A DNA stretch of 63,445 bases, filler included, from Octopus bimaculoides (lineage: Eukaryota): assembly GCF_001194135.2 (NCBI RefSeq). It is 7 parts of 7 records of this genome, joined end to end, with 100 filler letters (N's around TTAATTAATTAA, not from the genome) between each part and the next. Parts side by side here need not be neighbours in the genome. Positions count along the whole stretch, not along the records: positions 27,169 to 52,439 come from NC_068991.1; 6 more parts are not named here. One strand, 5' to 3'. The notes beneath the pieces were generated by a model, which saw only the letters and a program-made list of their open reading frames with translations, did no database searches and was not told where the DNA came from. Below are positions 34,077 through 52,199 of this stretch, piece by piece; position 1 is the first letter of the stretch, and the number at the start of each line of letters is the position of its first letter. The translations under genes were made by a program, and so were the position numbers.

Positions 34077-34311
34077 TTTTTTCCAGTCAGAGTATGACTT
34101 GCGTGAATATTTTTCTTCAATATTTCAAATTAACAAAGAAAAGACCAAGATGCATATGAACCAAGACAAGCTGGAGCGCCATGCAATGTTGCTAATGGAA
34201 ACACTAGGATTTGCAGTCACCAAATTGGATGAAATTGAAGATCTTCGAGATTTCCTTAACGATTTGGGTGGTAAACATTATTGGCGTAAAGTGAAACCTT
34301 GCATGATTCGG
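34077..34311 (+). CDS. Globin (neuroglobin-like), internal coding exon, helices B12 to G6
   Basis: Acceptor ttgtctttcAG ends at 34076 (phase 2, B12.2) and donor CGG|gtaaga starts at 34312 (phase 0, G7.0). Translation xFFQSEYDLREYFSSIFQINKEKTKMHMNQDKLERHAMLLMETLGFAVTKLDEIEDLRDFLNDLGGKHYWRKVKPCMIR contains CD1 Phe, distal E7 His (KLERHA) and proximal F8 His (LGGKH). E7-F8 spacing is 32 residues, as in vertebrate neuroglobin. Confidence 0.93.
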
Positions 34312-34804
34312 GTAAGAAAGATTAATGTTGTTCAAGCAGTAGATCAATGAATTTGTAATACTAGCATACTAGATTCATTTCCTATCAGAATCAACATTGT
34401 GTACACAAACACACAGACAAACACACACATGCACAAACGTACGTGCACACACGTGCACGCACACATATACACATACACAAACTTATTATGCACACATCAC
34501 CACCACCACTGCTACCATCATTATCATTATTATCACTTTAACATCCACTTTTCCATGCATGCATGAGTTAGATGGAATTCCTGAAGGTAGATTTTCTTTG
34601 ACTTAATGACCTCCTGCTGTCAGCCCTCATCTATTTTCAAGCAAGGTAAATCCCACATGATCAGATATGTTTTTTAGGAAGACTGACAACAAAGGACTTT
34701 GTTTGTATGATGGTGATGCTCATTTATAACTACCCCATGATGTCAAACACAAACACATACACACATACATATACAGATACATATACATATATGTGTATGT
34801 GTGC

Positions 34805-34858
<54 letters not shown>

Positions 34859-35555
34859 NNNNNNNNNNNNNNNNNNNNNNNNNNNNNNNNNNNNNNNNNN
34901 NNNNNNNNNNNNNNNNNNNNNNNNNNNNNNNNNNNNNNNNNNNNNNNNNNNNNNNNNNNNNNNNNNNNNNNNNNNNNNNNNNNNNNNNNNNNNNNNNNNN
35001 NNNNNNNNNNNNNNNNNNNNNNNNNNNNNNNNNNNNNNNNNNNNNNNNNNNNNNNNNNNNNNNNNNNNNNNNNNNNNNNNNNNNNNNNNNNNNNNNNNNN
35101 NNNNNNNNNNNNNNNNNNNNNNNNNNNNNNNNNNNNNNNNNNNNNNNNNNNNNNNNNNNNNNNNNNNNNNNNNNNNNNNNNNNNNNNNNNNNNNNNNNNN
35201 NNNNNNNNNNNNNNNNNNNNNNNNNNNNNNNNNNNNNNNNNNNNNNNNNNNNNNNNNNNNNNNNNNNNNNNNNNNNNNNNNNNNNNNNNNNNNNNNNNNN
35301 NNNNNNNNNNNNNNNNNNNNNNNNNNNNNNNNNNNNNNNNNNNNNNNNNNNNNNNNNNNNNNNNNNNNNNNNNNNNNNNNNNNNNNNNNNNNNNNNNNNN
35401 NNNNNNNNNNNNNNNNNNNNNNNNNNNNNNNNNNNNNNNNNNNNNNNNNNNNNNNNNNNNNNNNNNNNNNNNNNNNNNNNNNNNNNNNNNNNNNNNNNNN
35501 NNNNNNNNNNNNNNNNNNNNNNNNNNNNNNNNNNNNNNNNNNNNNNNNNNNNNNC

Positions 35556-35870
35556 TTATTCTTTGTAAGCCTAGTACTTATTCTATCGGTCTCTTTTGGC
35601 AAACCGCTAAGTTATGGAGACGTAAACACACCAGCATCGGTTGTCAAGCGATGTTGGGGAGACAAACACAGATACACAAACACACACACACATATATATA
35701 TATATACATATATACGACAGTCTTCTTTCAATTTCCGTCTACCAAATCCACTCACAAGGCTTTGGTCGGCCCGAAGCTATAGTAGAAGACACTTGCCCAA
35801 GGTGCCACGCAGTGGGACTGAACCCGGAACCATGTGGTTGATAAGCAAGCTACTTACCACACAGCCACTC
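35556..35870 (-). mobile_element. SINE family A copy (young)
   Basis: Near-consensus sequence. Confidence 0.85.
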
Positions 35871-35919
35871 AATGTGTGTGTTTATTTGGCAAGGAAAAAA
35901 AAAATGACCATCCTGAAAT

Positions 35920-36570
35920 ATAACAATATCTGTTTTAACACGCGATTTCACATCAGGAATCTTGCAAACAAATACATAAACATACCTGAAAAGAACTTTC
36001 AAACAACTTATTAAAGCAAATGCAGGTAAGATATACCTACATTAATTAACTTCAATAAGAAATTCAAAATAAATCTAGATAACATAGCTGAATCATGAGT
36101 TTAGGTGAAATACTCAATTAAGAATGACTCTTGGAAAATATATGGCAAAACTGCATCCATGATTTTGTAAGTTTTCCAAAAATCAGAAAAGTCTACATGA
36201 CATCAGGAAAGCTATTATGACACTTGTAAAATGATGTGAGGTTTGAAGAAGTCATACAAGATGATGTATTTGAGTTGGTAATGTTTCATAGGGAAAGTTT
36301 AACTAACAAGGAACTAATGCTATCAGAATAAAAGCAAGCGAAGAATATGGAAATTCCACCAACTCCACTTGAATTCTTTGCAATGAATATTACTACAGTG
36401 TTTGAACTTGTTGAGGAAGGTCAGGAAGTTTTGCTTACAGCAACTCAAATTGTGAATGCAACATAAAATTTGCAAGAGAAATTTACAATGAATTCAGTTG
36501 TTACACTAAGTTGTACAATGAAATGATGTGTCATAAACATCAAGAATTTTGGATGTGTTCTTCACCCCTC
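35920..36570 (+). mobile_element. Tigger/pogo transposase C-terminal fragment, decayed
   Basis: Frameshifted INLDNIAES*V*VK, WKNIWQNCIHDFVSF, HDIRKAIMTLVK and FEEVIQDDVFELVMFH..SLTNKELM match the Tigger C-terminal region (W..W.NC.HDF.GF...EV...DV.EL..SH...LT). Confidence 0.72.
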
Positions 36571-36798
36571 TGGCAGATCTTTTATTTTTTATTTGTTTCA
36601 ATCATTAGACTGTGGCCATGCTGGGGCACCACTTTGAAGAATTTTAATCGAACTTATCAACCCTAGTGCTGGTTACCTTTTTATAAAGCCAGGTACTTAT
36701 TCTATCGGTCTCATTTGTCGAACTGCTAAGTTACAAGTATGTAAACACATCAACACTGGTTGTCAAGTGGTGGTGGGGAACAAACACATACACAAACA

Positions 36799-36847
<49 letters not shown>

Positions 36848-36851
<4 letters not shown>

Positions 36852-49564: not shown

Positions 49565-50039
49565 AAGTACCAGGCATAAAAAAGAAAAAAAAACGGTGTT
49601 GATTTGTTCAATTAAATTTCTTCAAGGTGGTGCCACAGTGTGGCCACAGTTTGATGCCTGACGAAGATAAAAGACCCACTAAATCCCTTAGTAAAACTTT
49701 ACGCTAAGGGAAGTAACTCTTGTACTATGGCACTGAAACTTCTTAGAGTCGCTTTATTTGCTAGAAATAGCAACCCAAATGCTTTTAAATCAGATGTTCA
49801 AGAACCAAATGAAGAGCAGATTTCCAATCCCAGGATCATCCTGATTCCAAAAAAGTATAATATGTCTATGGTCGGAATATAAGCTAGGTTGATTACCACC
49901 TCACCGGGCAAGGAGACAGGCAGATGTTCACAAATGCAACGTCTTTCCCAGGTGAACAGTGTACACCCCAACATCAGCTACTAGTTAGTGACTTCAGTAT
50001 TAAATTCTCTTCCTCACATTTCTTCCTCATACATTATGA

Positions 50040-50790
50040 TTGTTTTCCAATCCCCTTTCTTGCCCTCACTGCTATACTTACTGTATTACTGCTCCCCACA
50101 CCCCCACCACCCACACCCACTCCCTATTTTTCTCACCAGGTTCTACGCTCATATTCTTGTTACTTGTAAGTACACCCTAGCACTACACCATCTCTCTCTC
50201 TCTCTCTTACACTTTTGCTGTTTCCCACTCTCTCCTTCTTTCCCTTTGATCACTCTCTCTCTCACTCACTGAGTAACCATGTACTTCCTCTATAGCAAGA
50301 CACCTATTTCTGCCTCTATTTCTCTGTTCCACTCTAACTTTTCATCATTTAATACTGGATCACTTCCTCTAATGCCCCCTCTGTTGTGGCAAGACACCTA
50401 CTTCTATCTCTCTGTCACTTTGTCACATTCTAACTTTCATCCTCTGACACAAATGCCCTGCTCTTTTCATAATTTCTTGTCTTGTGAGCGACTTGGTTAC
50501 CCTACCAGTGCTGGTGCCACATTAAAAGCATCCACTCCATACTGTAGTGTGGTCTGGAAGGGAATCCAACTGTAAAAAGCTTGCCAAAACCAACTTCGCC
50601 TGTGCTTGTGCCACGTAAAAAGCACTGAGTCCACTCTGTGGAGTGGTTGGTGTTAGAAAGGGCATTCCACTGTAAAATCCCTGCCAAAACAGATACAGAA
50701 GCCTTGGGTAGACTTCCTGCCTGGCTGGCTCCTGTCAACCGTCCGACCCATGCATGCAGGGAAGATGGATGTTAAACAATGATGATGATG
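50040..50790 (+). mobile_element. RTE-type 3' UTR/SINE-like repeat ending in (GAT)n
   Basis: Homologous to 37930-38545. Confidence 0.65.
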
Positions 50791-50839
50791 AAAAATATAT
50801 ATATATATATATATTCATATATTATATGGGTGTGTGTGT

Positions 50840-50878
<39 letters not shown>

Positions 50879-51134
50879 NNNNNNNNNNNNNNNNNNNNNN
50901 NNNNNNNNNNNNNNNNNNNNNNNNNNNNNNNNNNNNNNNNNNNNNNNNNNNNNNNNNNNNNNNNNNNNNNNNNNNNNNNNNNNNNNNNNNNNNNNNNNNN
51001 NNNNNNNNNNNNNNNNNNNNNNNNNNNNNNNNNNNNNNNNNNNNNNNNNNNNNNNNNNNNNNNNNNNNNNNNNNNNNNNNNNNNNNNNNNNNNNNNNNNN
51101 NNNNNNNNNNNNNNNNCATACACAAAGACACACA

Positions 51135-51168
<34 letters not shown>

Positions 51169-51668
51169 TATATGTGTGCATATACTGTGTTTCAAATTAT
51201 TACCAACATAACATTAGTTTAGTTTATTTAAAAACTACTTGTTGGAATTCAACAAAATTTCCACAGAGTGATTACAACAGTTATATGCAGGTGGTGTGCA
51301 AGAAACGTGAGATTTTGTGCAAGTGTAAACAAACCACAGCCATTTCCATAATTTCCACAAACTTTCATTGTTCTAAATAATTAACGAGTGGTCTGATAAT
51401 CATGTAATTATGGGTCGTAAATGTAACTTAACTGCTACAGGGAAATCTGTTATTACTTCTGGACTTGAAAAAAGTAAATCAATATTAGAAATGTCTAAAA
51501 TAATTGGAAGATAACACCAAACTATGAAAAAATTTGTTACAGCTCCTTGGAGGATACGTAACAGTGCTGACAAGGGTCACTCAAGGGTTGCTTCTCAATG
51601 TTCTCTGTTACAAATTAAGAGTGAAGCTGTAAAGACGCCAGGTCTTACAAGTGGAGAACTCCCTACCC

Positions 51669-51712
<44 letters not shown>

Positions 51713-51914
51713 GAATGTCTCCATTTTCAATCTTAACTTCTTTTCTTTCTCTTTCTGTCTCACATCTATCTTTTTTAGTTTTCTGTCCCTCACTCTTCTC
51801 TTCCTTCTCTCATTCCTACTTTGTCTCTCAGCCCCTATTATAACTTCACCAACACAACAAATTAATAACATCTATTTGTCTATCCTTTTTTTTTTTCTTT
51901 TGTTTCCATTCTAG

Positions 51915-52199
51915 CGTTTGTGGCCCATCATTGATGACAGTTTCCGACAAGTTCTGTGTGATGTGTACACAACAGAGGTGCGAGAGGCCTGGCAGACATT
52001 TATTGAGTTTATATTTGAGAGTATGAAAGAAGGAATCGATGCAATGTCACTGGCTCAAAGTCTATCCACAGAGTGCGAAATCAATATCATCAACAACCAA
52101 AGTAATGATAAACCAATTTTGAATCGTCTTGAAGAGAATTCTGATGCAGAATTAACAATATCTGATGAAAATGTTGACACTAAACTACTGAACAAATAA
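51915..52199 (+). CDS. Globin (neuroglobin-like), terminal coding exon: G7 to H helix plus acidic C-terminal extension
   Basis: Long pyrimidine tract and ttctAG ending at 51914, phase 0, matching the donor at 34312. RLWPIIDDSFRQVLCDVYTTEVREAWQTFIEFIFESMKEGI is gap-free collinear with the globin G-GH-H motif (FT.E...AW...Y..I...M..G). It is followed by about 50 extra residues and TAA at 52197-52199. Confidence 0.9.
   Translation, partial: RLWPIIDDSFRQVLCDVYTTEVREAWQTFIEFIFESMKEGIDAMSLAQSLSTECEINIINNQSNDKPILNRLEENSDAELTISDENVDTKLLNK

What the first reader, a model, noticed from the sequence alone, without database searches (positions are those of the whole stretch)
34077..52199. Neuroglobin-like globin gene in a probable haemocyanin-using cephalopod
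Seen: two exons encode a globin fold with CD1 Phe, E7 His and F8 His. They align gap-free with neuroglobin from E7 to the end of helix H (LGGKH against LGRKH; E7-F8 = 32 residues), with introns at B12.2 and G7.0 and no central E-helix intron. Known: B12.2 and G7.0 are the ancestral globin intron positions, and cephalopods transport oxygen with haemocyanin. Inference: this is an intracellular, possibly hexacoordinate (His-His) nerve or tissue globin.
Basis: partly seen in the sequence, partly recalled or inferred. Interest (0 to 1): 0.7.

Follow-up and report, generated by a model that had tools for sequence, protein, structure and literature searches.

The report
Known octopus globin gene, not neuroglobin
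The two exons are the last two of three coding exons of an already annotated Octopus bimaculoides globin gene (LOC106879404, labelled "neuroglobin"). It belongs to a mollusc/annelid-only globin clade with a likely lipid membrane anchor, and is not a true neuroglobin.

Summary
Window 34077-34311 and 51915-52199 are two canonically spliced exons. Joined, they give a 172-residue product that hits Pfam Globin (42.9 bits, cut-off 22). CD1 Phe, E7 His and F8 His are present, and the introns sit at B12.2 and G7.0.

The piece is 100% identical to O. bimaculoides chromosome CM046611.1. The product equals residues 58-229 of RefSeq XP_014784435.1, so the gene is already annotated. All six assembly gaps lie inside intron 2 and hide no coding exon. 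The gapless O. sinensis orthologue has the same three exons, and a transcript contig from a related animal reads through both junctions.

The interpretation needs three corrections:
- There is a first exon about 8.5 kb left of the piece. It encodes helices A-B and an MGCGLSF start, a predicted N-myristoylation plus S-palmitoylation signal, so the protein is probably membrane-tethered.
- It is not a neuroglobin orthologue. A published ML tree (Song et al. 2020) and my own NJ bootstrap (81-88%) place it in the spiralian-specific "Sp-gb" clade. Octopus has no clade V (neuroglobin) gene.
- Hexacoordination remains untested.

Purifying selection (pN/pS 0.08 in the core) shows the gene is functional. 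Verdict: real, ordinary, already known. Tissue expression could not be checked.

The parts
27169..34076 (+). 3' part of intron 1. Exon 1, encoding MMGCGLSF...GVYIYY + AG, lies about 8.5 kb left of the piece, beyond a 2232-N gap.
   Evidence: tblastn finds no exon 1 in the piece. In the public O. bimaculoides locus, exon 1 is at L003 3001-3173, with donor AG|GTAAAA, and the piece starts at L003 11683. Window 27811-30126 is collinear with O. sinensis intron 1.
34077..34311 (+). Coding exon 2 of 3 (235 nt): end of helix B through helix G6. It carries CD1 Phe69 (34111-34113), distal His92 E7 (34180-34182) and proximal His124 F8 (34276-34278).
   Evidence: Searches give the sequence and frame. Pfam Globin scores 30.5 bits for this exon alone. 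It is 100% identical to XP_014784435.1 residues 58-135. The splice sites are conserved in O. sinensis, and the junctions are read through in transcript L001.
34312..51914 (+). Intron 2 (G7.0, phase 0), nominally 17.6 kb. It contains all six assembly gaps, SINE-like repeats and microsatellites.
   Evidence: GT...AG boundaries. The O. sinensis orthologous intron is 11.6 kb, gapless and has no extra coding exon. Collinear anchors are, and the gap edges sit in repeats.
51915..52199 (+). Coding exon 3 of 3: helices G7-H plus a roughly 50-residue fast-evolving acidic/polar C-terminal tail. Stop TAA is at 52197-52199, and the 3' UTR runs on into a microsatellite.
   Evidence: It is 100% identical to XP_014784435.1 residues 136-229 and to UniProt A0A0L8G4T2. 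pN/pS against O. sinensis is 0.08 in the core and 0.83 in the tail.

Best explanation
This is the 3' two-thirds of the O. bimaculoides gene LOC106879404 (XP_014784435.1 / XP_052827562.1, named 'neuroglobin isoform X1' by NCBI). It is a three-exon, single-domain 3-on-3 globin of the spiralian-specific 'Sp-gb' clade.

Shown:
- Intact exons with canonical, conserved splice sites at the ancestral B12.2 and G7.0 positions.
- Invariant haem-pocket residues (Phe CD1, His E7, His F8) across 17 family members.
- A confident globin fold prediction.
- Strong purifying selection on the core.
- Orthologues in other octopuses and bivalves, and a second octopus paralogue.

Inferred:
- The protein binds haem.
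- After removal of the initiator Met it is N-myristoylated on Gly and S-palmitoylated on the adjacent Cys of the conserved MGCG(L/F)SF start. That start is encoded by exon 1, outside the piece.
- The protein therefore sits on the cytoplasmic face of membranes, as shown experimentally for zebrafish globin X.
- With a distal His it is probably hexacoordinate in the unliganded state.
- It probably does membrane-proximal redox work (protection against ROS, NO/nitrite chemistry or O2 sensing) rather than bulk O2 transport, which haemocyanin performs.
For: Gene identity:
- Pfam Globin hit.
- 100% identity of the translation to XP_014784435.1.
- The piece is 100% identical to GCA_001194135.2 CM046611.1.

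Gene structure:
- Exon 1 and its AG|GT donor complete the Ser codon.
- The O. sinensis orthologue has the same three exons in a gapless locus.
- Transcript contig L001, at 69% identity, has an uninterrupted ORF and an MGCGFSF start in an ACCATGG context.

Clade placement:
- Song et al. 2020 (PMC7771090), Additional file 6, lists this protein as clade 'Sp gb' with dual N-terminal acylation 'yes'.
- In blastp all 7 other Sp-gb references outrank every other clade.
- NJ bootstrap support for Sp-gb including the query is 81% and 88%. An 81% subclade joins it to Pinctada, Crassostrea, Pecten and Tegillarca proteins.

Conservation, selection and fold:
- F69, H92, H124 and W161 are invariant, and the MG start is at least 90% conserved, in the 17-sequence family alignment.
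- pN/pS is 0.08 in the core.
- The AF2 model has mean pLDDT 84, above 90 over residues 30-190.
- Foldseek TM-scores of 0.8-0.9 to neuroglobins, cytoglobins and other hexacoordinate globins.

Precedent: globin X membrane targeting needs both acylation sites, and globin X is hexacoordinate (PMC3176823 abstract).
Against:
- Acylation is only predicted from motif and conservation.
- The annotated ORF starts MMGCG. Myristoylation requires initiation at the second ATG, which has the better Kozak context (A at -3, G at +4) but is unproven.
- Some family members lack the Cys or have unclear starts.
- No member of the Sp-gb clade has a solved structure or, as far as I found, published ligand-binding data. 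The best PDB sequence hit is a cytoglobin at E 6e-6. Hexacoordination and function are therefore argued by analogy.
- Deep relationships among globin clades are unresolved, with low bootstrap support. [quoted passage not shown]
Confidence: 0.8

Rival explanations
1. It is a true orthologue of vertebrate neuroglobin (clade V), that is, a cytosolic nerve globin.
For: NCBI names it neuroglobin or neuroglobin-like. From E7 to helix H it aligns with Ngb without gaps. Ngb structures give the best Foldseek E-values. In the NJ tree Sp-gb lies in a weakly supported (27%) super-group with clades III and V.
Against: Identity to human NGB is 25% (35 bits). Molluscan and annelid clade V proteins score 35-50 bits, against 57-129 bits for Sp-gb members. 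The query joined a clade-V-only neighbour in 3 of 300 bootstrap replicates. Pinctada, Lottia and Platynereis carry both clade V and Sp-gb genes, so the two are paralogous lineages. Two published surveys find no Ngb in octopus. The N-terminal acylation motif is absent from vertebrate Ngb. The Foldseek scores for cytoglobin and other globins are nearly the same as for Ngb.
Confidence: 0.07
2. It is a soluble, pentacoordinate myoglobin-like O2 store or facilitator in octopus tissue, and the N-terminal motif is not used.
For: Octopus lacks clade I (Mb/Cygb-type) globins, so some other globin could fill that role. The annotated ORF begins MM, which would block myristoylation if the first ATG is used. 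NCBI also models N-terminally truncated isoforms without the motif.
Against: The MGCG(L/F)S start is conserved from octopus to a 69%-identical relative, which has a single ATG in a perfect Kozak context, and to bivalve orthologues. The truncated isoforms lack helices A-B and could not form a globin fold. The O. sinensis alternative first exon is not conserved in this window. A distal His with Leu at E11 is compatible with either coordination state.
Confidence: 0.1
3. It is a decaying or non-functional gene copy, or an annotation artefact created by joining pieces across assembly gaps.
For: Six assembly gaps lie between the two exons. One UniProt model of the same gene (A0A0L8G4T2) skips the haem-binding exon. 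One intronic segment is inverted relative to O. sinensis.
Against: The frame is open and the splice sites are canonical and conserved. pN/pS is 0.08 in the core. The same exon order is found in the gapless O. sinensis locus. A transcript reads through both junctions in a relative. All haem-pocket residues are invariant.
Confidence: 0.03

Closest known systems
Spiralian-specific globins, 'Sp-gb' clade (Song et al. 2020, BMC Evol Biol 20:165, PMC7771090), e.g. Platynereis Pdu-Sp-gb, Pinctada Pfu_2070, Crassostrea virginica XP_022312376
   Same: This very protein is listed there as Sp-gb. It shares the family signature VKPxM(L/I)xRLWPxI, a long CD-D segment (23 residues from CD1 to E7), invariant Phe CD1, His E7 and His F8, and an MG(C) N-terminus. 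It clusters with the clade at 81-88% bootstrap.
   Different: Nothing defining. The octopus protein has a roughly 50-residue C-terminal tail that evolves almost neutrally and is absent from most relatives.
Globin X (clade III), zebrafish GbX (Blank et al. 2011, PMC3176823)
   Same: It has an N-terminal extension with adjacent myristoylation and palmitoylation sites, and a distal His. It is expected to be membrane-bound and hexacoordinate, with a non-respiratory role.
   Different: It belongs to a different clade. Octopus has three separate clade III genes, and blastp to clade III scores only 33-49 bits. GbX genes are described (my recollection, not tested here) as having extra introns at E10.2 and H10.0, which are absent here.
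Vertebrate neuroglobin (clade V)
   Same: Same 3-on-3 fold, His E7 and His F8 32 residues apart, a gap-free alignment from E7 to helix H, and B12.2 and G7.0 introns. It is the best Foldseek hit, with target-normalised TM 0.84.
   Different: Only 20-25% identical. It has no E11.0 central intron, it has an N-terminal acylation motif, Tyr rather than Phe aligns at B10, and it lies in a different phylogenetic clade.
Cytoglobin (clade I)
   Same: It is the best PDB sequence hit (D. mawsoni Cygb-1 6q6p, E 6e-6, 24% identity). It shares N- and C-terminal extensions beyond the globin core and the B12.2 and G7.0 introns.
   Different: Different clade. Clade I is absent from octopus, and cytoglobin has no acylation motif.

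Membership tests
Globin superfamily (Pfam PF00042, 3-on-3 fold) | Significant match to the Globin profile above the curated cut-off | tested here: met
   42.9 bits against a cut-off of 22, E 7.8e-11.
Globin superfamily (Pfam PF00042, 3-on-3 fold) | Proximal His F8 and Phe CD1 at the homologous columns | tested here: met
   H124 aligns with Mb His93, HBB His92 and NGB His96. F69 aligns with CD1 Phe in all four human globins. Both are invariant in 17 relatives.
Globin superfamily (Pfam PF00042, 3-on-3 fold) | All-alpha 3-on-3 globin fold | tested here: met
   AF2 gives pLDDT above 90 for residues 30-190. Foldseek gives target-normalised TM-scores of 0.8-0.9 to many globins. This is a prediction, not a solved structure.
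Globin superfamily (Pfam PF00042, 3-on-3 fold) | Binds haem | not testable with these tools
   Needs recombinant protein.
Neuroglobin (clade V) orthologue | Groups with Ngb/clade V sequences in a phylogeny | tested here: not met
   The published ML tree places it in Sp-gb. In my NJ analysis the nearest neighbours were Sp-gb in 290 of 300 replicates and clade V in 3 of 300.
Neuroglobin (clade V) orthologue | His-His hexacoordination of the unliganded haem | not testable with these tools
   Distal His92 is present. Spectroscopy is needed.
Neuroglobin (clade V) orthologue | Neuronal expression | not testable with these tools
Sp-gb (spiralian-specific globin clade) | Falls inside the clade with support, and comes from a spiralian | tested here: met
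   Song et al. 2020, Additional file 6. My NJ bootstrap gives 81% with 47 sequences and 88% with 67 sequences. All 7 labelled Sp-gb references top the blastp list.
Sp-gb (spiralian-specific globin clade) | N-terminal myristoylation/palmitoylation motif (frequent in the clade, not universal) | tested here: met
   MGCGLSF in O. bimaculoides and O. sinensis, and MGCGFSF in L001. The paper predicts dual acylation. The motif is encoded outside the piece, and the modification itself is not testable here.
Globin X (clade III) | Groups with clade III / GbX in a phylogeny | tested here: not met
   Clade III forms a separate group that includes three other octopus genes.

The most novel reading that the evidence does not exclude
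Octopus has lost both the clade I (myoglobin/cytoglobin-type) and clade V (neuroglobin) globins. This membrane-tethered Sp-gb paralogue may have taken over their tissue or neuronal role. The clade may also be structurally distinct, because AF2 predicts a beta-hairpin in place of the usual CD-D segment. Characterising it would give the first biochemistry for an entire, still unstudied globin clade in a haemocyanin animal.
Probability: 0.2. Interest if true: 0.45.

Novelty: already known. Interest (0 to 1): 0.15.

Why it matters
There is little new here. The gene is in RefSeq for three Octopus species, and this exact protein was classified in a published bilaterian globin phylogeny.

The useful points are corrective:
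- The database name 'neuroglobin' is misleading, because the protein is a spiralian-specific, probably membrane-anchored globin.
- The UniProt model A0A0L8G4T2 of the same gene skips the haem-binding exon. That model would not be recognised as a globin, which may matter for surveys of globin gene content.
- The Sp-gb clade has no solved structure and, as far as I found, no functional data. An octopus member could be a reasonable entry point for studying non-respiratory globins in an animal whose blood pigment is haemocyanin.

Tried and rejected
It worked through the cluster member P0165, but the public assembly carries the same gaps.
- The first AF2 run, with 4 sequences, was useless (pLDDT 42.7). 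The second, with 17 relatives, was good.
- The profile word-index search returned only 8 proteins. The exhaustive HMMER search was far more informative.
- Echinoderm and dinoflagellate multi-domain globins top that list only because scores are summed over 3-12 domains. Single echinoderm (or unnamed metagenome) domains score 35-72 bits and fall near clade V, not in Sp-gb. This rejects the idea that Sp-gb has echinoderm members.
- I looked for an extra or alternative coding exon in the piece. The O. sinensis isoform X2 first exon (MRIILEDLR) is not conserved here, and its donor GT is AT in the window.
- Rfam found nothing in the piece.
- ORFs at 31381-32411(-) gave only sub-threshold helix-turn-helix hits, so 'transposase remnant' stays a guess.
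- No ML tree program was available in the sandbox, so my phylogeny is NJ with Kimura distances only.

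
Full report
**What is in the sequence**

Exon A runs from 34077 (acceptor tctttcag|T) to 34311 (donor CGG|gtaaga). Exon B runs from 51915 (acceptor ttctag|CG) to the TAA stop at 52197-52199. Read from 34078 and joined, they give an open 172-codon frame. Base 34077 is the third base of a split codon.

The joined product hits Pfam Globin at 42.9 bits against a gathering score of 22 (E 7.8e-11). Exon A alone scores 30.5 bits. The best PDB sequence hits are a fish cytoglobin (6e-6) and neuroglobins (about 0.02).

The landmark residues are Phe69 (CD1, 34111-34113), His92 (E7, 34180-34182) and His124 (F8, 34276-34278). 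E7 and F8 are 32 residues apart.

**Intron positions**

I aligned the protein with 46 reference globins. The split Ser codon falls on human beta-globin Arg30 and myoglobin Arg31 (mature numbering). The exon A/B junction falls between beta-globin Arg104|Leu105 and myoglobin Glu105|Phe106. From established knowledge these are the B12.2 and G7.0 intron positions. Exon A is uninterrupted from B12 to G6, so there is no E-helix intron.

**Where the window comes from, and the gap test**

The piece 27169-52439 is 100% identical, gaps included, to positions 11683-36953 of locus L003. L003 is O. bimaculoides assembly GCA_001194135.2, chromosome CM046611.1, 22,194,131-22,233,843.

All six flagged N runs lie inside intron 2, and none touches a coding base. 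Three independent sources show that nothing coding is hidden in them:
- The orthologous O. sinensis locus (L002) has no N at all. It carries exon 1 (10001-10170), exon 2 (20607-20841) and exon 3 (32475-32753) with nothing in between.
- The window is largely collinear with that locus, through anchors on both sides of most gaps.
- A 1813-nt Logan contig from run SRR6517992 (L001) encodes a 69%-identical protein in one uninterrupted ORF that crosses both junctions. It is evidently a transcript of a related animal, species not named.

The gap edges sit in microsatellites and copies of a roughly 316-nt interspersed repeat, which explains the gaps.

**The missing first exon**

tblastn finds no exon 1 in the piece. 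In L003 it lies at 3001-3173, about 8.5 kb left of the piece and beyond a 2232-N gap. It reads ATGATGGGATGTGGACTAAGTTTC...TATTACAG|GTAAAA. Its last two bases, AG, plus base 34077 (T) make Ser57, which confirms the phase-2 B12.2 intron.

Exon 1 encodes helices A and B and an N-terminal extension that starts MMGCGLSFKSEKPKKKQKE. The second ATG has the stronger initiation context (A at -3, G at +4). The L001 relative has a single ATG in an ACCATGG context and starts MGCGFSFKS.

**It is an annotated, published gene**

The window translation is 100% identical to residues 58-229 of XP_014784435.1 / XP_052827562.1, 'neuroglobin isoform X1 [Octopus bimaculoides]', LOC106879404. Orthologues are annotated in O. 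sinensis (92% identity) and O. vulgaris.

The UniProt model A0A0L8G4T2 of the same gene joins exon 1 directly to exon 3. It therefore lacks both haem histidines and carries no Pfam globin hit.

**Which globin it is**

Song et al. 2020 (PMC7771090) analysed 272 globins from 24 metazoan species. They list this exact protein (Obi_961126590) as clade 'Sp gb', with myristoylation and palmitoylation sites both predicted and dual acylation marked 'yes'. They define Sp-gb as a well-supported clade that contains only mollusc and annelid genes. It is distinct from clade V, which holds human neuroglobin, and from clades II and III (globin X-like and globin X). Their table gives octopus seven globins: two Sp-gb, three clade III, two clade II, and none in clades I or V. 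Bao et al. 2021 (PMC8136487) likewise report that Ngb is lost in the octopus.

- In blastp all seven other Sp-gb proteins rank first (57-87 bits). The best non-Sp hit scores 56.6 bits and human NGB scores 35 bits at 25% identity.
- In an NJ tree with 300 bootstraps, Sp-gb including the query is monophyletic in 81% of replicates. The query's closest group is purely Sp-gb in 290 of 300 replicates.
- An exhaustive HMMER search of 1.84 billion representatives added relatives from Crassostrea, Pecten, Tegillarca, Babylonia, Littorina, Mercenaria, Argonauta and the nemertean Tubulanus.
- With these added, Sp-gb has 88% support. The query sits in an 81% subclade with bivalve proteins (Pinctada Pfu_2070, C. 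virginica XP_022312376, Pecten XP_033735690, Tegillarca KAJ8309158).
- The second octopus Sp-gb ('cytoglobin-1-like') sits in a sister subclade. The two octopus genes thus appear to stem from a duplication older than the cephalopod-bivalve split, although the node uniting the two subclades is weakly supported.

Multi-domain echinoderm globins top the HMMER list only because their scores are summed. Single domains score 35-72 bits and fall near clade V.

**Evidence that it is functional**

Across 17 family members, Phe CD1, His E7, His F8 and Trp161 are invariant. The MG start is at least 90% conserved, and the motif VKPxM(L/I)xRLWPxI marks the family.

Against O. sinensis, the globin core has 9 synonymous and 3 non-synonymous differences (pN/pS 0.08). 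The roughly 50-residue C-terminal tail has pN/pS 0.83, and the splice sites are identical.

AlphaFold2 with the 17-sequence alignment gives mean pLDDT 84, above 90 for residues 30-190. The model is a 3-on-3 globin with a short beta-hairpin (73-75 / 82-84) in the long CD-D segment. Foldseek finds neuroglobins first (TM 0.84 normalised to target). Cytoglobins, a tardigrade hexacoordinate globin and the Spisula hexacoordinate globin score almost the same. The fold confirms 'globin' but does not discriminate among types.

**How it most likely works**

What is shown is that it is an intact, conserved, selectively constrained haem-pocket globin.

The rest is inferred. MGxxxS is the N-myristoyltransferase consensus and the adjacent Cys is a palmitoylation site. 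The same arrangement in zebrafish globin X was shown experimentally to be required for membrane localisation, and that protein is hexacoordinate and judged non-respiratory (PMC3176823). By analogy the octopus protein is probably tethered to the cytoplasmic face of membranes. With its distal His it is probably hexacoordinate, and it probably acts in local redox, ROS, NO or O2-sensing chemistry. Haemocyanin carries the blood oxygen.

I put about 0.9 on the identity and clade, about 0.6 on membrane tethering, and about 0.5 on hexacoordination.

**Comparison and verdict**

The protein works like globin X and looks most like neuroglobin or cytoglobin in fold, but it is a member of neither family. 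It is a member of the Sp-gb clade.

The gene, its name, its clade and its predicted acylation are all already public, so the novelty is 'already known' and the interest is low. The only open questions are experimental ones: expression, coordination state, acylation, and the function of the whole Sp-gb clade.

Noticed in passing
window 33901-34025: A near-perfect palindrome with 59-nt arms (97% complementary, 7-nt loop) made partly of ATTATTTAC repeats. It ends 52 nt upstream of the exon 2 acceptor. It is present at the same place in O. sinensis, where the region is 95% identical, but the substitutions there are not compensatory, so it looks like a shared hairpin or MITE-like insertion rather than a conserved structure.
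   Followed up: partly
window 27731-28058(-), 35555-35870(+), 38676-38935(-), 41681-41894(+), 41908-42172(+), 44005-44181(+), 44509-44830(+): At least seven copies (76-93% identical) of a roughly 316-nt interspersed SINE-like element with an internal (CA)n/(TA)n microsatellite. Several copies abut assembly gaps, and many copies also occur in the O. sinensis locus. There was no Rfam/tRNA match at gathering score.
   Followed up: partly
window 36124-36411 and 36848-37138: An inverted duplication of about 290 nt (97% complementary), lying between two assembly gaps. O. sinensis has this sequence once, and window 36124-36840 is inverted relative to it. It could be a real rearrangement or a mis-oriented or fold-back contig in the draft assembly.
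   Followed up: partly
window 48437-48811 and 49228-49550: Two direct copies (94% identical) of a roughly 325-375-nt element carrying a 124-128-codon ORF on the minus strand. A related copy lies in intron 1 of O. sinensis (L002 11579-11860). There was no Pfam hit.
   Followed up: partly
window 31381-32411 (minus strand): A run of broken ORFs with only sub-threshold helix-turn-helix Pfam hits (E 0.003-0.04). They may be a degraded DNA-transposon (Tc1/mariner-like) remnant in intron 1, but this is unproven.
   Followed up: partly
UniProt A0A0L8G4T2 (P0004), covering window exon 51915-52199 but not 34077-34311: The 2015 O. bimaculoides gene model of this locus splices exon 1 directly to exon 3, dropping the exon that carries both haem histidines. 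That model has no globin Pfam hit and could be missed in globin surveys.
   Followed up: yes
L002 20045-20070 versus window about 33510-33540: O. sinensis isoform X2 uses an alternative first exon (MRIILEDLR) about 560 nt upstream of exon 2. In the window, homology breaks exactly there and the donor GT reads AT, so that exon is not conserved. NCBI's truncated isoforms (starting at Met83) would lack helices A-B.
   Followed up: yes
L003 3001-3006 (exon 1, outside the piece): There are two adjacent ATG codons. Only initiation at the second (A at -3, G at +4) exposes Gly2 for myristoylation. The 69%-identical relative L001 has a single ATG in an ACCATGG context.
   Followed up: partly
model m0545e28d4a87, residues 73-75 and 82-84 (window about 34123-34158): AF2 predicts a short beta-hairpin in the long CD-D segment (IFQ...KMH) where most globins have a loop or helix D. 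pLDDT there is about 82-92. The long segment is shared by the Sp-gb family.
   Followed up: no
P0005-P0008, P0010, P0015: Very long multi-domain globins (3-12 globin domains) from the sea urchin S. purpuratus, the starfish Patiria and Asterias, unnamed metagenome contigs and the dinoflagellate Prorocentrum cordatum rank high by summed score. The echinoderm and metagenome domains I placed in the NJ tree fall near clade V (neuroglobin-like); the Prorocentrum protein was not placed.
   Followed up: partly
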